DNA from: Macrostomum hystrix
Taxonomy: Eukaryota; Animalia; Platyhelminthes
DNA length: 64,000 bases
Direction: 5' to 3'
Assembly (NCBI GenBank): GCA_950097015.1
Contig: CATNEN010000015.1
Span: 496,001-560,000 of the forward strand
Numbering within the stretch: the first letter of the stretch is position 1; the number at the start of each line of letters is the position of its first letter. Positions 32,838 to 44,507 of this stretch are shown here, in pieces. The position numbers and the translations under genes are program-made. The notes under the pieces were generated by a model. The model ran no database searches. It worked only from the letters and a program-made list of their open reading frames with translations, and had not been told where the DNA came from.

Positions 32838-35800
32838 ATGTCTGCCTTTGAGGCGCTAGAGTACTACCGTCGCTACAAACTGGAAGATGACGAGATCGAG
32901 CTAGACTCTTACCTGCTGGACGAGGAGAACCTGGCTGAGAAGATCGGCTCGGGATTCTACCCGAGTCCCGCAGTGCTAGCAGGTCTGCAGCGCTGCCAGG
33001 GTCAGGCGCCGAGAGACCCGGACGCCAAGGATGTGAGGCCGTTTCCGTCGCGCAGGCTCAAGAGGGAGATATTTGACCAAGCCAAGTACACCGAGAAGGA
33101 CTTGTATGTGAAGTCGTTGCTGCCGCAGCCGGCCGAGTCGGGCGCGGACTTTGCGGCGAGGCTCTATCAGCAGTGCAACTCGAATCTGGACTTCGTCAGG
33201 GCAACCTTCTGCTTCGTGTGCAGCGTGCCGGCGCACGAGCTGGCCGAGGTGCCGGGCGAGTCCGAGTTCTACACCCAGGTCAGAAACATGCACCGGAATA
33301 GCGACGAGGCCAGCGTTTTCGACTGCCTCATCGGGTAAGAGGAGCATCTTTCTTGCAGGTGCTAAATCAGAAATTACCGTGAAAGTCAAGTATTTACTTG
33401 AAACTGTTGCCTACTATTACCTGGTATTACTATTGATCCTATTCTATGCGCAATACAGGCTAACCGTAGCGCATACAGCGTGTTAAGCATTCCTTTGTCA
33501 ATCTTTTATATTAGGTACCAGTAGGCTTCTTCTTCTACCTTTAACGTGTCTTAAAAAACGTTATCTTTCAAAGAAAATGACAGGGGGTCGTGTGGGCAGA
33601 GCGGCTAACGCGTTTGCCTTTCGCACCAATGTCCCTAAGCTCGATTCCGCGGCGAGGCCACATTTATTTGGGGCGCAGAGAAGGCTTGGGGTCTTGTCGT
33701 GCAATTTACGCCCTTTAGGGCTAACTTCCCTCTCGATGAGAAAGTCAGGGCTTGACTTACTTTGACTTAGCTGCAGGGGGGTCCATGGACGCAGCGGGGA
33801 GGCGAGGGTCGCCCATACCGCTAACCCCTGTAGGCCCGCAGACAGGCAAGGGCGCGGGGCCGGTCAGGGTGGTCTGCCGGTCCGTCCTGCAGCGTTGTCT
33901 TCCGTGGGGAAGAAAGTGGCTCGTCTTGTTGCACGAAGGAACTGGACGAGCCGTGGAATGCTGTCGGGCTGGCAGATCTCGTCCATGGACGGGTTGGGCC
34001 CGAGGTAGCGAAGCCGGTCTCTGTTAAAGAAAGGGCAGTGACACACAAAGTGCTCAGCATCTTCGGTGTCATACTCACAGAATGGGCAGAGTTCACTCTC
34101 AAGGTCACCCCGGAGGAAACAGTGCCTAGCGAGGTAGCCGTGGCCCGTGAGGGTCATGGCGAGGGCGCGGATATCCTTCCGGTTTTGGTTCAAAAGGATG
34201 CTCCTGAGCCTGCGAGACGGGCGCGGAACTGCGGCACGGGATTGCCGACAGTTCTGGGTGCCCGCCCATCTGTCCCTGTGCAGGGATTCAGCCCAGTCAT
34301 CAATAAGGCGATTGATGACCGTGATGGGGATCGGGACCAGGGGAGCAGGTCCCAGGAGAGAGCCTGAGCCACCTTGCTTGGCAAGGGTATCCGCAAGCTC
34401 GTTCCCTGGGAAGCCCGCATGCCCTGGGATCCAGCTCAGCTTGACCGTGTTGTTACTGGCCAGGAGGTTGAGTTGCCGGGCACAGTCAGCGACTGTCCGG
34501 GAGCACGTGGTGGTGCTGCAAAGGGCTTGTAAGGCCGCTTGGCTGTCAGAGTGGATGATGATGGTCTCTCCTCTCGTATTCCTGGCATTCAGCTCTGCGG
34601 CACAAGAGCTGATGGCAAGGATCTCATTCTGGAAGACCGTGGAGAGTCTCCCAGTATGTTGGGCATGCGTGGCGACGACGCGGCCGTTGATCAGGATGCA
34701 GACCCCAAAGCCGGCAAGGCCGTCTTTTAGGGATCCGTCCGTGTAGCAGTGGACCTCCTGGTGGTTCCAGTGGTCGTTAGCGTCATCCCTCGAGGGAATG
34801 ATGATTTTGTAGCGCTGGGTGAGATTGAGAGTGCGTGGTTCGCCGTCAGATAAGACGTGGAGTCCGCCGCCATCTTTCAAGTCACGAAGGCACAGATCGG
34901 TGTGAGGCAGAAGTTTGCGTTTTGCCATTGCTCTTTGCGGCGTGAAGCGGACGCCGGCGTCAATGAGCCGACGCGCTGTTTTGGCGGCTTCCCTGCGGAC
35001 AAAAATGTCCAGCGGGGTAGCGTCGAGGAAGGCATTGAGGCCGTCGTAAGGAGCAGACGGTGGGGCACTCATGGTCATGCGACAAGCGCGCCCTTGCGTT
35101 TTCCTAAGTGCCTCCAGGCAGGTCTTCATCTGCAGGGCACTGGCCCAGATCAAGCTGCCGTACGAGACAGCTGGCCTGACCATTGCAGTATAGATCCACC
35201 AGAGGCGCTTGGGGGTGAGCCCCCAGGTGGTGCCAACGGCCCTCCGCAGCTGCGCGAGGATCGCGAGGGCCCTCTTGGTTTTGGTTTGAACATGGGGAGA
35301 CCAGTTCAGCCTATGGTCCAAGGTGATCCCTAGGCATTTGGTTTGCTTACAGAAGGAAATTTCCTTACCGTAAAGCCTAAGCGGCTGTATCTGCCACTTG
35401 TTTCTGCTGGTGAACATGATCACTGCAGTCTTGGTCTCGGAGAGCTTCAGACCACAGCGACCCGCCCATTGTTCAGCAGAGTGGATGAATTTCTGAAGGA
35501 GGTCCCTGAGAGTGTCAGGGGATGGGCCAGACGCCACAGCAGTGACATCGTCCGCATACCCCACCTTCAGGATTGGGTCAGGACGGTCGTCACGGAGGAG
35601 CTCGTCAATGACCATGTTCCAGAGAATAGGAGAGAGGACCCCTCCCTGCGGGCTCCCTTTGCGGACGGGGACCGTCCGTTGGTGGCCCAGCAGGTTGGCA
35701 GTGACCGTGCGATGACTGATCATATACATGATCCATCTGGTGAGGGACGAGTGAGTGTGCCTCTCGTAAAGGGCTTTGCGGAACGCTTCGAAGAGGACGT

Positions 35801-38800
35801 TGTCAAAGGCACCATCAATGTCTAGGAAGACGCTTAAGGCGAAGCCGGTGCCAAGCACAGCTTTCTCCAATTTGTCGACCAGAACGTGCAGCGCGCTTTC
35901 GGTGGAGCGACCCGCCCGAAAAGCATGCTGGTTGTCGCTGAGCGGCGCGTTCTTCAGTTCCACTGAGAGAAGGCGCCACAGCACTAGTCTCTCCATCAGC
36001 TTGACCAGGAAGGTGGTTAGGCTGATTGGTCTGAAGGATTTTATAGACTGGTAGTCCGGGCGGCCTGGCTTCGGGATAAAAATCACCTTCGCCTCGGTCC
36101 ATGCCTGCGGGACGTACCCGAGCGTGATGCAGGCTCGATAGAGGTTGCAAAGAGAGCGCAGGAAACCTGGGCATTTAACCGCCTCTCTAAGAAAGGCAGG
36201 TACGATGCCATCAGGCCCTGGAGCCTTGAAAGGCTTGAAGGAGGTGGCCGCTTTAGCGATACGGTCCTCCGTGATGATAGAGGCAGCCAGCATCTGGCCT
36301 CCCTCAGTGTGGTCTGAGGTGGTCAGGTTGGTTGGTTCGTTGGGGAAGAAGGCAGAGAGCATGACCTCAAGCGTTTCTCCTGGGTTGTCAGTTGACGTGC
36401 CGTCGGTTCGCTTAACCGAGGAGAGCTTGGACATTTTGTCTAGCGTAAGTGCTTTGACAATTCTGGAGGTGGGGCGTGAGCCCTCTAGCTCCTCGCAGTA
36501 TTGGCGCCACTTCTGGGCCTTGGCAGTCCTGATCTCCCTCTTGAACTCATGGATGGCTTCAAGGTAGGCGGTCTGGTCTGCAGGGCTCCTGGTTTTGTTC
36601 GCTCTGCGGTGTAATCTCTTCGCTCTGCGACGGAGGTCGCCGAGCTGAGGATTCCACCACGGCGCAGATGTCTTCCCTTTGTAGGCTTTTAGGGGACAGG
36701 CAGCCTCGAAGGCGGCGGTTAGCGTTTCTGTTAAAACAGTCGCGCACTCGTCCGCCTCTCGGCACGTCGAAATAGTGGGTGGTTGGCCCGAAGACCGATG
36801 GGTCGTCTCCAAGGCATGCCTGAAGGCTTCCCAATCAGTATTTCTGGCGTTCCGTCTCCACGTGATGTGGTTTAGGCTGCGAGCGCTCGCCACACGAAAG
36901 TGAATGAACTTATGGTCAGAGAGGGACGGCACCGGGAGCACGCGCCACACCCCAATACTCTGAAAGAGCTTGGGTGAAGCGAGCGTGGCGTCAATCACCT
37001 CTGACCAGCGTCCATTGTCGAAAGTAGGCGTAGACCCAGAGTTACAGAACTCCAGGGTCGTAGAGGTAACATAGGACAGGAGGTCTTCGCCTCTCTGGTT
37101 TATCCCTGTGCTGCCCCAGTGGGTATGGTGGGCGTTGATGTCGCCGGCGACCATCAGCTCATAATTCCTGGCAGAGCAGAGTTCGACCAGGGTGGTGAGC
37201 GTCCGGGGGACGACCGCTACGTCACCTGGTAGGTAAACCGAGGCAACGAGGGTGGTTCTCCCAGGCAGCAGATCCTCAGATTGAATGACGCAGATATCCC
37301 CGTTAGACAGGTCGGGTCTGAGCCAAGCACCGAGGGTTTTGGCCCCGAAGATACAGGCTCTAGGTGGCCGGTTCGCCTCGCGGGGGCTAACGCAGAAGCA
37401 GTTGTACCCAGAGGGCACGTTTTGGGGCTTACCTTTGGAGGTCCACGGCTCCTGGACTAGGATGAGACCCGGCTTGTCGAGCTCGGCTTGACGCATCAGG
37501 TTAGCCGAAGCTGCGACGCTGTGTTGCAGATTAATCTGCAGGCAGCTAATTCCTGGACTGCTGATCATGGCCGCGCAGTCGGGGAGTCGCGTAGCAATTC
37601 CTCCTCTTCCTTTTCGGAGATGGAAGGCTCGCAAAGCTCCATGGGAATCTCGGCGTCCCCGGCGGTCAGGGTGGCTGAGGAGCCCTCAGCGGGCATTTGC
37701 CCAGCAAGAGTGTCTCCCTCGCCGTCCCTTTGCGTCGTGACGCCGATACTGCCCAGGCTCGCCTCGTCGGTCAGGTCAACGTGGATGGCGCGATCCGCCT
37801 GGTGAGTGCTAGCCTCAAACCAGTCAGTCGGCGCCTCTCCTCGTCGCTCCTGCCCCACTGGCTGCTTCGGTGGAGCGTTCGATGTGTGGGCCCGCTCAAG
37901 GTGCGCCCTGAGAGTCCTGGCTTGTTCCAGCGCACGCTGGACCAGCCCAGATCTCCGGGTGGACCTGGCAGGCCTGCGGTCGCGAGGTCCGGATTCGGCA
38001 GCGCGGGCTGCTTTACCGGGGTGGGGATCCACCGTTTGCCTCTGCTTCTTCGCCGGAGGAGCTTGCGCCCCGGATCCGGACTCAGGAGCTTTGGCTTTTT
38101 TGGCTTCGCCAGCTTTCCTCTCCTCGCAGCGGAGGATGGTCAGCTGAGTTAGACCAAGGTGAATGATGGACTTTGGCGGCAAGCGCTTCGTCCACGCATC
38201 CGAGAGCCCCAGGATCACCGTGAACCCCGTCTCCTTGCGGGAGGAGGCATGGTGGAGGAGCCCGTTGGCCTCAAGGTCGGGGTGCAGCTTCAGCAGAATC
38301 TGCCTAAGCTGATCCCCAGATTTGATGGCACTGCCATTCGGAATCCAAACGCGGAAGCGTTCGGTTTTAATGCGTTGGCCTTCGCTGGCGAAGGTGAGTT
38401 TGCCGAGCTTCTTGGGCCATTTTAGCTGTGGCAGAAGCTCGCGTAGAGCTCGGCTGCTTTCCTCGGAGTTGCACCAGATGAAGATGCAGCCGTCCGTTTT
38501 GGCCGATTTGACCACGCTCACCGGGCGGCCTGCCAGGAGCTGGTCAATGAGCGCAGCGTCGATGATGCGCCATACACTGTCGAGCTGCTCGGCCGTGAGG
38601 TCTTGCTCTTCCCCAAAAACGATGACCGCGGGTTGGAGCATGGCACTGGCCTTGGAGGCGTAGGACTCCTTGGCCTTGGTAGATGGTTGGCTGGCCGGGG
38701 CCTCGCTCGCCATCGTTGCATGTGTGGCGGCTCCAGATGGCCCAGCCACGTTGCCGGTGTTTGAGTTGCTGGTGGGCTCAGCGGGTGGTGACCCCGCGGA

Positions 38801-40168
38801 GGCGGTTTCCCGAGGGGCTGAGGTGGCGGTGGCTCCTTTCGGCCCAACCGCTCCTACGCCCACTTGAGGCACCACCTCCGCGGATTGCCGAACCGCGGCC
38901 TCCCTCTCTCGCTGTCGCCGACGCCGTTCGTTGCGGCGTTGGTTGCGGCCTTGACGGGCTTCCTTGGACCGGATGCCTGGGGGTCCGGGGACAGGTCCAC
39001 CGTCAGGCAGGGCGGAAGCGGGTCCGGTAGCCTCCGGTGGGGCGACGTTGGCGCTGTTGGAAGCGGCCGGAGCAACTGGGGGGTTTCCAGTTTCACTATC
39101 TTTAAAAGATTGAGCAGAAGAAGCCATTGCTGAAAGCGGGAGGAGGGTGAGAGGTGACTCACAAGAAAAGAGAAGAGAATAAAAAGAAACCGCTAAAGAC
39201 CGGACTACTCCCCGGCCAAGCGCCCTTCGGCACGGCGAGACCTTGGGCCTTAGAGGGCGGCAGAAAGCAGCGCCAGACCCGCAGTTAACCTGCGTACCCT
39301 GTTAAGGTCGAAGGGTGACACCTTTCCCTCAGAGCCGTAGCCAGAGGTACCTGATCACGCACAGGTGCACGAACGCTGCGGACTGGCCGCATACCCTGTT
39401 AAGGTCGAAGGGTGACACCTTTCCCTCAGAGCCGTAGCCAGAGGTACCTGATCACGCACAGGTGCACGAACGCTGCGGACTGGCCGCATACCCTGTTAAG
39501 GTCGAAGGGTGACACCTTTCCCTCAGAGCCGTAGCCAGAGGTACCTGATCACGCACAGGTGCACGAACGCTGCGGACTGGCCGCATACCCTGTTAAGGTC
39601 GAAGGGTGACACCTTTCCCTCAGAGCCGTAGCCAGAGGTACCTGATCACGCACAGGTGCACGAACGCTGCGGACTGGCCGCATACCCTGTTAAGGTCGAA
39701 GGGTGACACCTTTCCCTCCAGCCGGGGCTAGAGGTACCCAGTTTGGCCAGAGGCCCTGGATGGGTCATCCAGTGCTGTTGCCCATTCTGTCCGGCAGCCC
39801 TAGGGTCAGCCTTGAACACTCGCGGGACGTGTACCCATGGGTCAGCTGACGGGACAGCGTGGAGGGATTCCTGCACCCGAAGGCACAGGGCTCCCTCCTG
39901 CCAGGCCTGCTCAAAAAGCGACTGCAGGTGTGAGGCATCGCAGACCTTAGCCCGTGGGCCTGGTCTGACTCATACCTCACAGGCGCTGTGTCCCGCCGGT
40001 GCGAGCGAAAGTCAGGGCAGATGTACACACATGTGTGAGCGTGTGCCTGCGTACGGTATCTGAGTGCGTGTGTGCTCAGGAGTCAGCGAGATGGGCAAAA
40101 TTGCCTCCTCGCTGGCTGCGGGTCTAGTGTCACTAAATGATGTGCCATTGCCCGCAGATCCAATTATT

Positions 40169-40209
<41 letters not shown>

Positions 40210-43200
40210 GGAAATGACAATGCCACTTCTGAAACTTCAGCCTGACTAGTGTGCCGTCGCGGAAGATCACGGGCTACAAGAAGGGCGCCTTCTACGAGAG
40301 CGGCATGAAGGCCAAGGTGTCAGGCGGCAACTGGACCGCTTGCTACGTAGAGGGCGAGTGGCGGCTCGTGGACCCGATGTGGGGCGTGCAGAGCCTCTGC
40401 GGCGTCGACACCGGCAACTATGCGACACTCGACGCGGAAGGAAACGTAGAGACTGCGCAGAAGTCCGAAGGTCAATTGGTCTACGGTTGCAACGAGTTCT
40501 TCTTCCTCACCGATCCTGAGAACCTCATTCTGACTCACTTCCCCATCGAGGAATTGAGCCAGTGGCAGCTGCTTGCCAGGCCGCTAACGCTGGCGGAGTT
40601 TCAGAGAATGCCCAAGTTTTTCTCGGGTGGACAGGACGAAATGCTTTTCTATAGCATCATTCCCGCAAGCCATCCGCTGAATGTCATTCCGGCCCGACCT
40701 GGCAATATAAAAATTTACCTGAAGGAGGCCGCAGGTGAGATGTACGAGTATGATGCCAAAGTCAGCATCCACAAGAGCAGCATCAACGATGGCAGCAGAG
40801 CAGCCATAAAAGAGCACACGAGTGTCAACGGCTATCTATCGAAAATGACACGGATGAGTGCAGACACTGTGCAGTTCAAGTTTGTGCCACCGTGCACTGG
40901 AAAATTCATGCTGACGATTTTCCTCAAGCGATCGGTTGAGTATCCTGAAGAGTCCATTGTGAGGGTGACCACCATCGAATACGTTTCTTACGTCATTCAC
41001 TGTCCTCAGGCGGACAAAGGTGCAGCAATGCTGCCCCAGGGATCTTCTGAGCTGAGTCACTTCGGTGCCGGGGCGCGGCTTGCTGCCGCCGGCCTGAGAA
41101 CTGATGAGCCCGGCGAGATCTCGGTGATTGATGGCGAGCGATTGATTAAGCTGGACTCAGTTAATACAAACCGTCAGCTGGAGTGCCAGCTGCTTGGAGC
41201 AGGAAACGAGAGTCTGCCAGCCACCAACCTGCTTACTTGGCTTCGCGGTCCACTGCTGAACATCCAGTTCCTGTCTCCTGACGCGGGTTCATTCGCTCTG
41301 GTGATCCGGGACAGAGGCGTCCCGGTGTGCCAGTTCATGCTGGACTCTTCCTCTGAATTTCGCGACTGTCGGGACTTTCCACTGCCCGATATTGAGAGCC
41401 ATGGTGGTCTGAGCGTGGCACACGATGACCTGAGCAAAATAATTTCTGCTCTGAGCCATCCAGATCCGTATGTTATTTGTGAGGAGCCAAGCCTTGAGCT
41501 CAAATTTAGGTCAGCCACACGATTGGAGATCAGAGCGGAACTGTTCCACACCAAAGCCGATGGTCGAACTGAAGAGCTCACTGGATATACTTTCATCAGC
41601 AGTGACAGCGAAGGCTTCGTTGTGGATGTGCGATTTAAGATCGCTGGTCACTACGTCGTTAAACTGTTTGCTAGAAAGGATAGTTCAGAGCCTTGGCGCC
41701 GCTACCTGAACTACTTTATCCGTTGCGTAGGTCTTCTGAGCGGTTGTGCGGAACAGTTTCCGGATGTCATGCCCGCTTGGAAGAGCGACAACTTGCTGAT
41801 TCAGCCGAAACAGAAGCTGCTGCCGCTGAATAAGCCTGTGTCCATATGCATGCAGATCAGAGACCCAGAGTTCAAAGTGGCCTACTTGCTGAACGAGTCG
41901 AAAAATGAGCGAACAACGATGCACGAAGAAAACGACAGAATTTGGCAGGGCAGAATCGAGGGATTCAGCGACTCTGCGGGCTCATCAGTCAAGGTTTTCG
42001 GTGGGCCAAGTTTGAACCAGTGCGACGAGCTGCTGCACTACCAGTTCGAGTCGGCCGAGGACCACACAATTCGAAACATGGATATTCGATCTGCTGCCAA
42101 GCTCAACTTGAGCCGCCTGAGCAGCGAGCGGCAGCGCAAACGAAAGCAGGAGAACCACGAGCGCAAAGCGAATGCGCTGGAGCCTCTGCCGGAGGTTCCT
42201 CAGGATGGGGAGTGGGCTGGCTCGCAGATGGAAAAGGAGCTCAAGGATTTGCTTCTGGAGGAGAAGCCGACGTTAGTAGGCGCCCCTGAGACTGAAACTC
42301 TCACCGAGTTGAATGCTAACGCTCCGAGCACTGCAGATTGTGGAGAGGCTGCCCACCAATGCGATACAGCTACAGCGCTGACCGAAGATGTCAGTGAAGA
42401 AGCCGAGGAGCATCAGGCTTCAGACGAGCAAGTGGCTCTCACTGACTGGCTAAACAAGAATCTGAGCTCGGACCCAAACTGCGGAAAGTACTTGCCCATC
42501 GAAGACATCTGGTCTGAAGTTGAGGAAAAGTTTGGCGACGGTGTGCTTCTGTGGTAATATTTTTATTTCATTGTCGTCATTATTTAATAAGCAACACCGA
42601 ATTAACTTTTTGTTCCTCCCTTGCAGCAGTGTGATCAACGCAGTCTCAGAAGATACGATCGACATGCGGGCTCTGAGAAACGGAAACAAGCCTTCTAAGT
42701 CGGACTGCTTAGAGAACATTACTTTGGCGGTTAACTCTGCTCAAAGTCTTGGAATCCCGATTATGGCCGATGCGGCCGAAGTTGCAAATAGCTCCCAGCT
42801 GATGCTCGACCTGCTGTGGCAGCTGATCTGGCTAGGCCTGTCGGAGGCTGTAAAGCAAGCCACTACAGCCGACTCGGAAACACTTCGCGTCCTGTTTCCT
42901 GACACCGAAGACAGGGTGGAGATTCGCGGCACAACACCGGATCAGATGCTCATCAAGTGGGTGAACTACCATCTTGGGATGGCGGGAAGTCGGCGAGTGA
43001 TTGAAAACTTCGGCCAGGATATCAGCGACAGTGAGGTTTATGCTCATTTGCTAATGCAGATCGCTCCACCCGAGATTAAAGACTGCCTGCATTCAGTTCG
43101 AGTGAGTAACACACAGTGTGAACTGCTTAATTTCAGAGCCACAATGCGCAGTTTAAAACCTTCCGAAATTTTCAGGACATTCTGGCTCAAAAAGATCTAC

Positions 43201-44507
43201 TAGTTCGAGCGCAGTTGGTTCTGCAGAACGCGGACCTCCTGAACGTCCGTGACTTCCTTCAGCCATCCGGCATTGTTGGCGCCAATTCCAAGCTGAACAT
43301 GGCCTTCGTTGCCAACCTGTTCAATCGGTACCCGAGTCTGCCGGAGCTCCAACAGCCTGAGGGCGGTACCGAACCCAGCAAAAAATCTGAGAAGAAGCCC
43401 GAGGTCGTTCGCGAGGAAAAAACATACACAAACTGGGTGAACTCTGTGGGCGTGGAGCCACGCGTCAACTGTTTGTACACGGACATGCGCTCCGGGTTGC
43501 AGTATCTGCAACTGCTGGACCAGATCCGACCGGGCCTTGTGCGCTGGTCCAGAGTTCACAGAGTCTTTCATGAGAAGCGGGAGAAGTTTCAGCATCTGGA
43601 GAACTGTAATTATGCGGTGGAGTTGGCCAGGCATTTGGGCTTCAGTTTGGTGGGTATCGGCGGAGAGGACCTGCTGAATGGCAACGAGAACCTGACGCTC
43701 GCCACTCTGCGGCAGCTGGTCACCGCTCTGGCCCCAGCGACGCTCGCCAAGTTGGGCGCCGATGCTGACAGTCGATCGGAGAAGTCCAAAAGGCTCATTG
43801 ACGAGCGCGCCATCATCGAGTGGACGAACCAGCAGCTGCAACGCAACGCCAAGGAGTCGCGGCTATACTCATTCCAAGATACTTCGATCGGAGACTCCCG
43901 CTGCCTATTGGACCTCATTGACTGCCTGCGTCCGGGCTCTGTCGACTACAACCTCGTGCTACCCGGGACCACTGAGAAAGTAAGTGTTTTAAAAGTAGAA
44001 CCACTGTGCTTGCAAGAGTTTTTTGCCTACGCGCTATTCGGGGAAATATCGTTGCCGGCTATTGATTAATTAGGAGGTGTAATTTTTTGAGCCAGAAGTT
44101 CGCTCTCTGATCTCTACCCCTGCGTGGACTTCTGGCCACTGCGTGGCTGGGGGAGAAGTATAATTTATTGTTGCTCGGAGCTGATGATCGGCTGGTGAAA
44201 TGTCGTCGAGTCCTTAGTTCATTTTTACTAAGCTGCTGTTTTATCCTAGCATTCGCACACAGGAAAGGGCATTGTGCACACTCGAGGGCTGGCCAACAAT
44301 CATCAAAGCGTGTTTCGCCCGCAGGAGCGGCTGCAGAACGCACGTCTGGCCATCAGCTTGAGCTGGCGCGCCGGAGCGAAGGTGTTCGCCAGCCCGGCCG
44401 ACCTTGTTCAGGCCCGGCCGCAGCTGGTGATGTCTGTGTTCGCCGCGCTAATGCAGCTGCACTATCAACGGGAGGCCTCTGTCCGCAGCAGTCACCGGGT
44501 TGACTGA
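32838..44507 (+). CDS. KY/hillarin/CYK3-like transglutaminase-fold protein fused to a plastin/fimbrin four-CH actin-binding core, ~1423 aa; exons 32838-33334, 40241-42553, 42627-43101, 43176-43979, 44325-44507
   Basis: TG-like motifs: ITGYKKG, WTACYVEGEWRLVDPMWG, NEFFFLTDPENLILTHFP. CH1-4 plastin motifs: DWLNKNLSSDP..GDGVLLCSVIN, DLLWQLI, LIKWVNYHL, NMAFVANLFN, REEKTYTNWVNS, LENCNYAVEL, IIEWTN, NARLAIS. All four GT-AG introns are in phase (4272 nt). Confidence 0.85.
33585..33751 (+). mobile_element. SINE family 2, 5' half of the copy split by the LINE
   Basis: tRNA-like head (TGGGCAGAGCGG, GCTCGATTCC), ending in GAAAGTCAGGGC. Confidence 0.75.
33864..37568 (-). CDS. pol: Retrotransposon ORF2: AP endonuclease, reverse transcriptase, RNase H, C-terminal Zn finger (1234 aa)
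   Basis: APE: LQINL, QEP, GDINAHH, SDH. RT: PQGGVLSP, YADD. RNase H: YTDGS, SDS, GNELAD. Zn finger: CPFC...H..C. No stops. Confidence 0.95.
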   Translation of the reverse strand: MISSPGISCLQINLQHSVAASANLMRQAELDKPGLILVQEPWTSKGKPQNVPSGYNCFCVSPREANRPPRACIFGAKTLGAWLRPDLSNGDICVIQSEDLLPGRTTLVASVYLPGDVAVVPRTLTTLVELCSARNYELMVAGDINAHHTHWGSTGINQRGEDLLSYVTSTTLEFCNSGSTPTFDNGRWSEVIDATLASPKLFQSIGVWRVLPVPSLSDHKFIHFRVASARSLNHITWRRNARNTDWEAFRHALETTHRSSGQPPTISTCREADECATVLTETLTAAFEAACPLKAYKGKTSAPWWNPQLGDLRRRAKRLHRRANKTRSPADQTAYLEAIHEFKREIRTAKAQKWRQYCEELEGSRPTSRIVKALTLDKMSKLSSVKRTDGTSTDNPGETLEVMLSAFFPNEPTNLTTSDHTEGGQMLAASIITEDRIAKAATSFKPFKAPGPDGIVPAFLREAVKCPGFLRSLCNLYRACITLGYVPQAWTEAKVIFIPKPGRPDYQSIKSFRPISLTTFLVKLMERLVLWRLLSVELKNAPLSDNQHAFRAGRSTESALHVLVDKLEKAVLGTGFALSVFLDIDGAFDNVLFEAFRKALYERHTHSSLTRWIMYMISHRTVTANLLGHQRTVPVRKGSPQGGVLSPILWNMVIDELLRDDRPDPILKVGYADDVTAVASGPSPDTLRDLLQKFIHSAEQWAGRCGLKLSETKTAVIMFTSRNKWQIQPLRLYGKEISFCKQTKCLGITLDHRLNWSPHVQTKTKRALAILAQLRRAVGTTWGLTPKRLWWIYTAMVRPAVSYGSLIWASALQMKTCLEALRKTQGRACRMTMSAPPSAPYDGLNAFLDATPLDIFVRREAAKTARRLIDAGVRFTPQRAMAKRKLLPHTDLCLRDLKDGGGLHVLSDGEPRTLNLTQRYKIIIPSRDDANDHWNHQEVHCYTDGSLKDGLAGFGVCILINGRVVATHAQHTGRLSTVFQNEILAISSCAAELNARNTRGETIIIHSDSQAALQALCSTTTCSRTVADCARQLNLLASNNTVKLSWIPGHAGFPGNELADTLAKQGGSGSLLGPAPLVPIPITVINRLIDDWAESLHRDRWAGTQNCRQSRAAVPRPSRRLRSILLNQNRKDIRALAMTLTGHGYLARHCFLRGDLESELCPFCEYDTEDAEHFVCHCPFFNRDRLRYLGPNPSMDEICQPDSIPRLVQFLRATRRATFFPTEDNAAGRTGRPP
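37565..39127 (-). CDS. Retrotransposon ORF1 (gag-like, 520 aa)
   Basis: Uninterrupted ORF directly upstream of ORF2, with a low-complexity/Arg-rich N-terminus and a globular central region. Its TGA overlaps the ORF2 ATG. Confidence 0.85.
   Translation of the reverse strand: MASSAQSFKDSETGNPPVAPAASNSANVAPPEATGPASALPDGGPVPGPPGIRSKEARQGRNQRRNERRRRQREREAAVRQSAEVVPQVGVGAVGPKGATATSAPRETASAGSPPAEPTSNSNTGNVAGPSGAATHATMASEAPASQPSTKAKESYASKASAMLQPAVIVFGEEQDLTAEQLDSVWRIIDAALIDQLLAGRPVSVVKSAKTDGCIFIWCNSEESSRALRELLPQLKWPKKLGKLTFASEGQRIKTERFRVWIPNGSAIKSGDQLRQILLKLHPDLEANGLLHHASSRKETGFTVILGLSDAWTKRLPPKSIIHLGLTQLTILRCEERKAGEAKKAKAPESGSGAQAPPAKKQRQTVDPHPGKAARAAESGPRDRRPARSTRRSGLVQRALEQARTLRAHLERAHTSNAPPKQPVGQERRGEAPTDWFEASTHQADRAIHVDLTDEASLGSIGVTTQRDGEGDTLAGQMPAEGSSATLTAGDAEIPMELCEPSISEKEEEELLRDSPTARP
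39297..39720. repeat. 97-bp tandem unit x ~4.4 in the LINE 5' UTR
   Basis: Units start at 39297, 39394, 39491, 39588 and 39685 (partial) and are essentially identical. Confidence 0.97.
40007..40210 (+). mobile_element. SINE family 2, 3' half of the split copy, with (ATT)n tail
   Basis: Resumes at GAAAGTCAGGGCAGATGTACAC and is colinear with the intact copy at 11475. Confidence 0.8.

What the first reader, a model, noticed from the sequence alone, without database searches (positions are those of the whole stretch)
32838..44507. Fusion of a KY/hillarin-type transglutaminase-fold module with the complete four-CH plastin/fimbrin actin-bundling core
Seen: one open exon (40241-42553) carries the TG-like domain, a long beta-rich region, an acidic linker and the start of plastin CH1 (LTDWLNKNLSSDP..GDGVLL), so the fusion does not depend on how I joined exons. 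Three more in-phase exons complete CH1-CH4, and no EF-hands are visible. The TG catalytic Cys and His appear lost (GNWTAC in place of HAWNAV; Asp kept in LVDPMWG). Established: plastins normally have an EF-hand head plus 4 CH domains and bundle F-actin, while KY, hillarin and CYK3 are TG-fold scaffolds in muscle or cytokinesis. Inference: a Ca-independent actin bundler carrying its own cytoskeletal scaffold. I do not recognise this architecture.
Basis: partly seen in the sequence, partly recalled or inferred. Interest (0 to 1): 0.78.

Follow-up and report, generated by a model that had tools for sequence, protein, structure and literature searches.

The report
Flatworm plastin with KY-type head
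This flatworm has a real five-exon gene in which an inactive KY/hillarin-type scaffold replaces the calcium-sensing head of the actin bundler plastin; Macrostomum lignano has the same fusion, which sits unnamed in UniProt and which I found described in no paper.

Summary
Five exons with canonical GT-AG sites (32838-33334, 40241-42553, 42627-43101, 43176-43979, 44325-44507) add up to 4272 nt, an in-frame model of 1423 codons plus stop.

Exon 2 is one 2.3-kb open frame. It holds the second half of a KY-type transglutaminase-like core, four Ig-like domains (Pfam Ig-like_KY), a conserved basic helix, a disordered acidic linker and the first 42 residues of plastin CH1. The fusion therefore does not depend on splicing.

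- **No EF-hand:** none is found anywhere in the window.
- **Catalytic residues:** the TG Cys column is lost, His is replaced by Asn, and Asp is kept.
- **Orthologues:** M. lignano proteins A0A1I8HW62 and A0A1I8III7 are collinear at 60-66% identity. This rules out an assembly chimera.
- **Origin:** the plastin half shares all three intron positions with this genome's canonical EF-hand plastin and is its sister in a tree. It is a lineage-specific DNA duplication joined to the tail of a KY-like paralogue.
- **Distribution:** I found no other taxon with this architecture and no paper describing it.

Calcium-independent, scaffold-targeted actin bundling is inferred, not shown. No transcript data were available.

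The parts
32838..33334 (+). Exon 1: start codon, N-terminal region and the first (helical) half of the KY-type TG-like core, including the lost catalytic-Cys position ('RNSDEASVFDCLIG')
   Evidence: ORF and donor GTAAGA. 61% identical to the N-terminus of M. lignano P0152, whose Met aligns with this ATG. Three paralogues pair the same exon 1 with exon 2 across short introns. TG-core alignment.
33335..40240 (+). Intron 1 (6.9 kb), enlarged by an antisense retrotransposon; (ATT)n microsatellite at about 40165-40210, just before the acceptor
   Evidence: The same intron is about 0.4-1 kb in the paralogues (coordinates).
33864..39127 (-). Non-LTR retrotransposon with two intact ORFs (ORF1 520 aa; ORF2 1256 aa with APE endonuclease, RT and RNase H) inside intron 1; not part of the gene product
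   Evidence: ORFs; Pfam Exo_endo_phos_2, RVT_1, RNase_H.
40241..40631 (+). Exon 2, part a: second half of the TG-like core (His to Asn in 'GGNWTAC'; Asp kept in 'LVDPMW')
   Evidence: AF2 model pLDDT 80-90. Superposes on the FAP246 papain-like plus Ig region, Z 12.4. Profile hit to FAP246, 1.2e-20.
40656..42047 (+). Exon 2, part b: four Ig-like beta-sandwich domains (roughly aa 139-254, 273-369, 401-495 and 518-602 of the exon translation)
   Evidence: Pfam PF23265 Ig-like_KY, 2e-17. AF2 model pLDDT mostly above 90. Single domains superpose on filamin C Ig domains, Z about 8.5, rmsd 2.5.
42054..42170 (+). Exon 2, part c: long basic helix ('...SERQRKRKQENHERK...'), the conserved C-terminal tail of the KY-like paralogues
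   Evidence: Helix 605-643 in the model. Conserved in paralogues L002-L004, P0002 and M. lignano P0152; the paralogues stop shortly after it.
42204..42425 (+). Exon 2, part d: acidic, disordered linker (19 D+E against 3 K+R in 73 aa) at the fusion junction
   Evidence: pLDDT 31-50. Poorly conserved and of different length in M. lignano. Frame 0 has no stop; the other two frames have 4 each.
42426..42553 (+). Exon 2, part e: start of plastin CH1 ('EQVALTDWLNKNL...GDGVLL')
   Evidence: 58% identical to the matching part of the canonical plastin exon in this genome; homology begins exactly here. Same exon end and phase as that gene.
42627..43101 (+). Exon 3: rest of CH1 and most of CH2 (ABD1)
   Evidence: Pfam CH, 9.8e-17. 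Collinear with P0152 at 60%. 38 of 50 plastin-invariant positions kept.
43176..43979 (+). Exon 4: end of CH2, CH3 and first part of CH4 (ABD2)
   Evidence: Pfam CH, 3.9e-33. Plastin-3 7r94, 3e-59. 68 of 84 invariant positions kept. Tree.
44325..44507 (+). Exon 5: end of CH4 and stop codon
   Evidence: Pfam CH, 2.8e-05. Aligns with the C-termini of canonical plastins, 14 of 20 invariant positions kept.

Best explanation
This is a genuine, selectively maintained protein-coding gene of a Macrostomum flatworm, with five exons and 1423 codons. Its product joins two modules. The first is a KY/hillarin-type head: a transglutaminase-like core that has lost its catalytic Cys and His, four Ig-like domains and a basic helix. 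An acidic disordered linker of about 70 residues connects it to the second module, a complete plastin/fimbrin actin-crosslinking core (CH1-CH4, that is ABD1 plus ABD2) that has lost the EF-hand and switch-helix head.

Origin (shown): the canonical plastin gene was duplicated at the DNA level, because all three introns are kept. The copy was joined, inside the exon that formerly held EF-hands plus the CH1 start, to the C-terminal tail of a KY-like paralogue. This happened before this species and M. lignano split.

Mechanism (inferred): the plastin core still binds and crosslinks F-actin, but without the calmodulin-like calcium switch. The non-enzymatic KY head acts as a protein-binding scaffold that places or tethers the bundler at a particular cytoskeletal structure.
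For: - **Single ORF across the junction:**. The linker frame is open while both other frames hold 4 stops each.
- **Gene model:** canonical, in-phase splice sites, and total exon length divisible by 3.
- **Domains:** Pfam Ig-like_KY plus CH; plastin-3 hit at 3e-59.
- **Orthologous fusion in M. lignano:** E = 2e-275 and 63% identity for P0001, with Pfam CH x4 plus Ig-like_KY. P0152 (1450 aa) is collinear across exons 1-4, including all three junctions it spans.
- **Origin of the plastin half:** the canonical plastin at G000:C3 has EF-hands and the CH1 start in one exon ending at the same codon and phase, and shares the two other introns. In the tree, the window and M. lignano fused copies group at 100/99 and are sister to the canonical Macrostomum plastin at 97/96.
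- **Origin of the KY half:** the KY paralogues end just after the basic tail that precedes the linker here.
- **Constraint:** dN/dS 0.15-0.24 for both modules against their paralogues; 38/50, 68/84 and 14/20 plastin-invariant positions retained.
- **Structure:** AF2 model of exon 2 with pLDDT 83 and pTM 0.79, disordered only in the linker. The TG plus Ig region superposes on Chlamydomonas FAP246, Z 12.4, and the profile hits it at 1.2e-20.
Against:
- Pfam Transglut_core does not reach threshold.
- The fused plastin clade has a long stem branch (0.5 against 0.14 for the canonical copy), and 19-30% of plastin-invariant positions have changed. Actin binding could therefore be altered or weakened.
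- dS is saturated, so the dN/dS values are rough.
- An in-frame Met in the linker ('SQMEKEL') leaves room for a separate plastin-only product.
- The M. lignano models appear to read into the intron where the window has its last exon, so CH4 completeness rests on the window alone.
Confidence: 0.8

Rival explanations
1. The locus makes two products. The long ORF exists, but the plastin core is mainly expressed by itself, from an internal promoter, an SL trans-splice acceptor or an internal ATG in the linker. The KY-like part would then be made separately or terminated early, so the 'fusion' is a minor or incidental isoform.
For: The linker is poorly conserved and holds an in-frame Met. No transcript data were available. 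From general knowledge, Macrostomum uses spliced-leader trans-splicing; I did not test this here.
Against: No stop separates the modules in either species, although the linkers differ in length and sequence. In the window linker frame 0 is open and the two other frames are closed. The KY paralogues carry their own stop soon after the basic tail, and this gene has lost it. CH1 begins only 42 codons before the exon's donor site, so there is no separate 5' exon for a plastin-only gene.
Confidence: 0.12
2. It is a decaying or non-functional chimeric gene: a recent accidental junction of a KY-like duplicate and a plastin duplicate that is not maintained by selection.
For: Both parent families are multi-copy in this genome: at least 28 KY-like matches and 4 plastin-like loci. 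The fused clade has a long stem branch. An intact LINE sits in intron 1. One M. lignano locus (L028) is a truncated, frameshifted copy.
Against: All five exons are open with canonical splice sites. The orthologue in M. lignano is conserved at 60-66% in the domains, and only the linker drifts. dN/dS is about 0.15-0.24. 70-81% of plastin-invariant positions are kept.
Confidence: 0.05
3. The junction is an assembly chimera or annotation artefact.
For: None found. This is the default worry for an unusual architecture.
Against: The junction lies inside one uninterrupted ORF on a 2.09-Mb contig. The same junction is present in independently produced M. lignano protein models.
Confidence: 0.02

Closest known systems
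Plastin/fimbrin family (PLS1-3, Sac6/Fim1, AtFIM1; solved structures 7r94, 1rt8, 1pxy)
   Same: It has four CH domains forming two tandem actin-binding domains. It is collinear with plastin-3 residues from about 120 to the C-terminus. It nests phylogenetically beside the canonical Macrostomum plastin and shares that gene's three intron positions.
   Different: It has no EF-hand headpiece and no switch helix. Instead it carries a KY-like head and linker of about 890 residues ahead of CH1. It evolves faster than the canonical copy (stem branch 0.5 against 0.14).
KY (kyphoscoliosis peptidase) / hillarin / LTD-1 / Cyk3 family of transglutaminase-like scaffold proteins
   Same: It has a TG-like (papain-like) core followed by Ig-like_KY domains. 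It has lost the catalytic Cys, as do most animal relatives in the alignment. The family is reported as cytoskeleton-associated, for example KY with filamin C in muscle (abstract of PMC6078408) and Cyk3 in cytokinesis (PMC3718969).
   Different: It carries a plastin core at the C-terminus. None of the other 149 best-scoring KY-like cluster representatives has CH domains. Pfam Transglut_core is below threshold, and His is also lost.
M. lignano UniProt entries A0A1I8HW62 (P0152), A0A1I8III7 (P0001) and fragment P0161
   Same: They are orthologues with the same architecture and the same junction, 60-66% identical.
   Different: They are automatic, unreviewed models named only 'TGc/CH domain-containing protein'. 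After '...LPGATE' their C-terminus no longer aligns with the window's exon 5 and apparently runs on into the intron, so the end of CH4 is missing.
Chlamydomonas FAP246 (ciliary central-apparatus C1b protein; 7n6g/7sqc)
   Same: It is the only solved structure with sequence-detectable homology to the head (profile E 1.2e-20). The TG-like core plus the first Ig-like domains superpose at Z 12.4 over 292 residues, rmsd 4.8. It too is a structural cytoskeletal component, described as having LRR, papain-like and EF-hand domains (10.1101/2021.06.16.448709).
   Different: Its partner domains differ and it has no CH domains. It sits in a microtubule-based rather than an actin-based structure. Identity is only 16%.
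Filamins (CH-CH actin-binding domain plus Ig-repeat rod)
   Same: They combine CH-type actin-binding domains with a run of Ig-like domains in one chain. Single Ig-like domains of this model superpose on filamin C Ig domains (Z about 8.5, rmsd 2.5).
   Different: The domain order is reversed (Ig first, CH last). There are two ABDs per chain instead of one. The resemblance is analogous, not homologous, and Z 8.5 for a single Ig domain is generic.

Membership tests
Plastin/fimbrin | Two tandem actin-binding domains, each made of two CH domains (four CH) | tested here: met
   Pfam CH in exons 3, 4 and 5 plus the CH1 start in exon 2. Four CH stretches in orthologues P0001 and P0152. Collinear with plastin-3, fimbrin and LCP1 structures.
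Plastin/fimbrin | N-terminal calmodulin-like headpiece with two EF-hands | tested here: not met
   No EF-hand Pfam hit in exon 2. The canonical paralogue's exon does give EF-hand hits, but its EF-hand part has no match anywhere in the window.
Plastin/fimbrin | Descent from a plastin gene (phylogeny and gene structure) | tested here: met
   Sister to the canonical Macrostomum plastin at 97/96 support. Three shared intron positions and phases.
Plastin/fimbrin | F-actin binding and bundling | not testable with these tools
   Only indirect: 38/50, 68/84 and 14/20 invariant positions kept; dN/dS 0.15-0.21.
KY/hillarin-type transglutaminase-like proteins | Ig-like_KY domain(s) (PF23265) after the TG-like core | tested here: met
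   64 bits against a cut-off of 27. Four beta-sandwich domains in the AF2 model.
KY/hillarin-type transglutaminase-like proteins | Transglutaminase-like (papain-like) core domain | tested here: inconclusive
   Pfam PF01841 is not significant for the window exons or for P0152. The region does align to the PF01841-bearing parts of relatives P0013 and P0014 and superposes on the FAP246 papain-like region. The core is split between exons 1 and 2, and I did not fold it as one piece.
KY/hillarin-type transglutaminase-like proteins | Cys-His-Asp catalytic triad (active members only) | tested here: not met
   The Cys column is lost, His is Asn and Asp is kept. The protein is therefore a pseudoenzyme, like most animal relatives in that alignment.

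The most novel reading that the evidence does not exclude
The KY-type head has taken over the regulatory role of the EF-hand headpiece. It may dock on or release the ABD1/ABD2 core, or dimerise through the conserved basic helix. Either way, actin bundling would be switched by a protein partner or by location rather than by calcium. If so, this fusion would be a natural experiment showing what KY/hillarin-type pseudo-transglutaminases bind: an F-actin-based structure. It would also be a new mode of plastin regulation, specific to macrostomid flatworms.
Probability: 0.2. Interest if true: 0.65.

Novelty: new variant of a known kind. Interest (0 to 1): 0.45.

Why it matters
The plastin architecture, an EF-hand head plus four CH domains, is described as highly conserved across eukaryotes (abstracts of PMC10533516 and PMC3259490). 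This gene is a clean, datable case in which the calcium-sensing head was swapped for a large non-enzymatic KY-type scaffold and then kept under selection in at least two species.

[quoted passage not shown] A natural fusion to an actin bundler hints that their scaffold acts on actin-based structures.

M. lignano is a laboratory flatworm (my own knowledge: RNAi and in situ hybridisation are established for it), so the orthologue A0A1I8HW62 could be tested directly. The case is lineage-restricted and built from known parts, so it is a useful example of domain shuffling rather than a new kind of system.

Tried and rejected
- **Single-sequence AlphaFold of P0003** (M. lignano fragment covering the whole TG core) failed, with pLDDT 35. 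I have no one-piece model of the TG-like core.
- **M. lignano genomic locus L028** (NIVC01002974) holds only a truncated, frameshifted N-terminal copy up to residue 354. It gave no independent genomic view of the junction.
- **Exact look-up of P0152** found no contig on record.
- **Search for transcript-derived fragments spanning the junction** returned only the M. lignano fragment P0161, so no RNA evidence was obtained.
- **Foldseek on the whole 770-residue model** gave generic tandem-Ig hits with very low TM-scores. Only the VIA re-alignment singled out FAP246.
- **Literature searches** for KY/hillarin with plastin or CH, for Macrostomum with plastin, and for the UniProt accessions found no description.
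- **The plastin allostery preprint** had no passage on head-less constructs under the terms I tried. The statement that a head-less core still bundles actin rests on my background knowledge, not on a paper read here.
- **Retroposition as the origin of the plastin half** is rejected, because all three introns are retained.
- **Joined protein:** Every search used single exons by reference or database proteins.
- **Human origin:** the contig is not human. It is a Macrostomum flatworm.
Full report
**Where the window comes from.** The window is G000:C15:496001-560000 of a 220-Mb, 42-contig assembly. Earlier notes of this scan call the genome a Macrostomum flatworm. I confirmed this indirectly: the closest database proteins to the gene are all from Macrostomum lignano, at 60-69% identity. 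The contig is not human.

**Gene model.** I read the splice sites directly from the sequence and checked them against the ORF list.
- Exon 1 is 32838-33334. It starts at ATG and has donor GTAAGA.
- Exon 2 is 40241-42553, with acceptor ttcAG and donor GTAATA.
- Exon 3 is 42627-43101, with acceptor ttgcAG and donor GTGAGT.
- Exon 4 is 43176-43979, with acceptor tttcAG and donor GTAAGT.
- Exon 5 is 44325-44507, with acceptor ccgcAG and stop TGA.

The junction phases are 2, 2, 0 and 0. The lengths sum to 4272 nt, or 1424 codons including the stop. All searches used single exons by reference. The M. lignano database protein P0152 served as the full-length stand-in.

**What the exons encode.** Pfam gives Ig-like_KY (PF23265, 2e-17) for exon 2 and CH domains for exons 3, 4 and 5. 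Exon 4 alone matches plastin-3 (7r94) at 3e-59, then S. pombe fimbrin and LCP1.

The last 42 codons of exon 2 ('EQVALTDWLNKNL...GDGVLL') are the start of CH1. They are 58% identical to the matching part of this genome's canonical plastin, and homology begins exactly at 42426.

**The head.** An AlphaFold model of exon 2, built on a 56-sequence alignment (A2), is confident: pLDDT 83 and pTM 0.79. In exon-translation numbering it shows:
- a compact N-terminal part, aa 1-130;
- four beta-sandwich domains, at about 139-254, 273-369, 401-495 and 518-602;
- a long helix, aa 605-643;
- a stretch with pLDDT under 50 at aa 677-726, inside a wider low-confidence region of about 655-728;
- the first CH1 helices.

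The only solved structure with detectable sequence homology is Chlamydomonas FAP246 (profile E 1.2e-20). It superposes on model residues 1-372 with Z 12.4 and rmsd 4.8 over 292 residues. FAP246 is a central-apparatus C1b protein described as having LRR, papain-like and EF-hand domains (10.1101/2021.06.16.448709).

Pfam Transglut_core is not significant for this protein or its orthologue. The region does align with the Transglut_core-bearing parts of molluscan relatives.

In an alignment of 48 KY-like cores, active-looking members show '..C.GY..', 'H.WNAV' and 'D..W'. The window and M. lignano proteins have no Cys at the first site, Asn for His ('GGNWTAC'), and keep the Asp ('LVDPMW'). Most animal relatives in that alignment also lack the Cys, so the head is a pseudoenzyme, as is common in this family.

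**No EF-hand.** The canonical plastin of this genome (G000:C3, locus L027) has EF-hands and the CH1 start in one exon (Pfam EF-hand_7; sequence). Only residues 97-139 of that exon's translation match the window, and nothing matches its EF-hand part.

**Conservation in a second species.** A full HMMER search of 1.84 billion cluster representatives with exon 2 gave one near-full-length hit that runs on into CH1. It is P0001, 1384 aa, 63% identical, E = 2e-275. It is UniRef A0A1I8III7, a 'TGc domain-containing protein' of M. lignano, with four CH stretches plus Ig-like_KY.

A plastin-core query restricted to proteins of 761-2422 aa added P0152 (A0A1I8HW62, 1450 aa) and the fragment P0161. P0152 is collinear with window exons 1-4 at 61%, 66%, 60% and 66% identity. 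The alignment crosses each predicted junction cleanly: '...LIG|LT..', '...LL|C|S..' and '...|..AQ.DLL.RAQLVLQNADL'. The domains are conserved, while the acidic linker differs in sequence and length.

This excludes an assembly chimera and argues for selection. After '...LPGATE' the M. lignano models no longer align with the window's exon 5 and seem to run on into the intron, so they lack the end of CH4.

**Taxonomic spread.** Three searches bear on this.
- Of the 150 best KY-like representatives, only P0001 has CH domains.
- Of the long plastin-core proteins, only the three M. lignano entries have Ig-like_KY.
- A junction-centred search found only P0161.

On these data the fusion is restricted to Macrostomum. 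One search scored only the 8000 candidates sharing most words with the query, so absence elsewhere is not proven.

**Origin.** The genome holds a large KY-like family, with at least 28 matches. The three closest paralogues (C15:181701-184621 and two on C2) have the same exon 1 plus exon 2 layout with short introns. They end shortly after the conserved basic tail '..RKRKQEN..R...LLPE'. In the fused gene, that tail runs on through the acidic linker into CH1.

The plastin half shares all three intron positions and phases with the canonical plastin on C3. It therefore arose by DNA duplication, not retroposition.

In a maximum-likelihood tree of the exon-4 region, the window and M. lignano fused copies group at 100/99. 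They are sister to the canonical Macrostomum plastin at 97/96, apart from insect and neodermatan plastins. The fused stem is long, 0.5 against 0.14.

The junction lies inside what was the EF-hand-plus-CH1 exon. This was not exon shuffling at an intron. The KY-like gene lost its stop and the plastin copy lost its 5' part.

**Constraint.**
- dN/dS (NG86, with saturated dS, so approximate) is 0.21 for exon 4 and 0.15 for exon 3 against the canonical plastin. It is 0.24 for the KY part against its closest paralogue.
- The window copy keeps 38/50, 68/84 and 14/20 of the positions invariant across ten canonical plastins for exons 3, 4 and 5. The M. lignano copy keeps 38/50 and 66/84 for exons 3 and 4.
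- The linker's reading frame is open, while the two other frames have four stops each.

**How it most likely works.**
- Shown: a single maintained ORF encodes a non-catalytic KY-type head, a flexible acidic linker and an EF-less four-CH plastin core.
- Inferred from the family's known behaviour: plastin cores crosslink F-actin and the EF-hand head confers Ca2+ sensitivity (abstracts of PMC10533516 and PMC2116281). My background knowledge adds that head-less cores and naturally EF-less fimbrins still bundle actin. The product is then an actin crosslinker that is not switched by Ca2+.
- Also inferred: the head binds a partner that localises or regulates it. KY is linked to filamin C in muscle (abstract of PMC6078408), Cyk3 acts in cytokinesis (PMC3718969), and FAP246 is a structural axonemal protein.
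- Speculative: the conserved basic helix (aa 605-643) might mediate self-association.

**Rivals.** A separate plastin-only product from an internal start cannot be excluded without transcripts (about 0.12). A decaying chimera (about 0.05) and an assembly artefact (about 0.02) are disfavoured by the conservation data.

**Novelty.** The architecture already exists as unreviewed, automatically named UniProt entries. I found no paper that mentions it. It is built from two known modules and is lineage-restricted. I rate it a new variant of a known kind, with moderate interest.

Noticed in passing
window:33864-39127 (minus strand, inside intron 1): Apparently intact non-LTR retrotransposon. ORF1 is 520 aa with no Pfam hit. 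It overlaps ORF2 (1256 aa) carrying APE endonuclease, RT and RNase H. It inflates intron 1 to 6.9 kb, against about 0.4-1 kb in the paralogues.
   Followed up: partly
window:40165-40210: (ATT)n microsatellite of about 15 units lying 30 bp upstream of the exon 2 acceptor.
   Followed up: no
G000:C25:5249165-5250664 (L025:6165-7664) and G000:C25:8196900-8201500 (L026): Two further, very divergent plastin-like genes that are sisters on a 0.96 branch. The first is a single 499-aa open frame covering CH1 to mid-CH4. No EF-hand was detected in the 6 kb upstream. EF-less plastin cores may therefore have arisen more than once in this genome.
   Followed up: partly
G000 genome-wide; tandem pairs at C2:9288341-9296961 and C34:3463738-3477698: The KY-like pseudo-transglutaminase family is strongly expanded, with at least 28 matching places. 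Several are tandem duplicates.
   Followed up: partly
P0152 / P0001 (M. lignano UniProt models), C-terminus: After '...LPGATE' both models continue with sequence that does not align with the window's exon 5, apparently read from the intron. They therefore lack the C-terminal part of CH4. The window's exon 5 (44325-44507) shows the expected ending.
   Followed up: partly
P0106 (Synchiropus splendidus, 1066 aa) and P0006 (Branchiostoma lanceolatum, 1861 aa): Other KY-like modules are fused to different partners: FERM_N/M/C plus Transglut_core plus Ig-like_KY in a fish, and TG plus 8 Ig-like_KY stretches plus CARD in amphioxus. The KY module seems to be a promiscuous fusion partner.
   Followed up: no
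L028 (M. lignano NIVC01002974.1:11889-33216): Truncated, frameshifted copy of the N-terminal 354 residues of the fused gene's orthologue. Two long ORFs of 1272 and 572 aa lie just upstream and look like a transposable element, though I did not scan them.
   Followed up: partly
P0154-P0162 (neodermatan flatworm plastins, 870-991 aa): Plastins of parasitic flatworms are 250-350 aa longer than the usual size of about 630 aa. Their precomputed Pfam lists show CH only and no EF-hand family. The extra length appears to be C-terminal.
   Followed up: no
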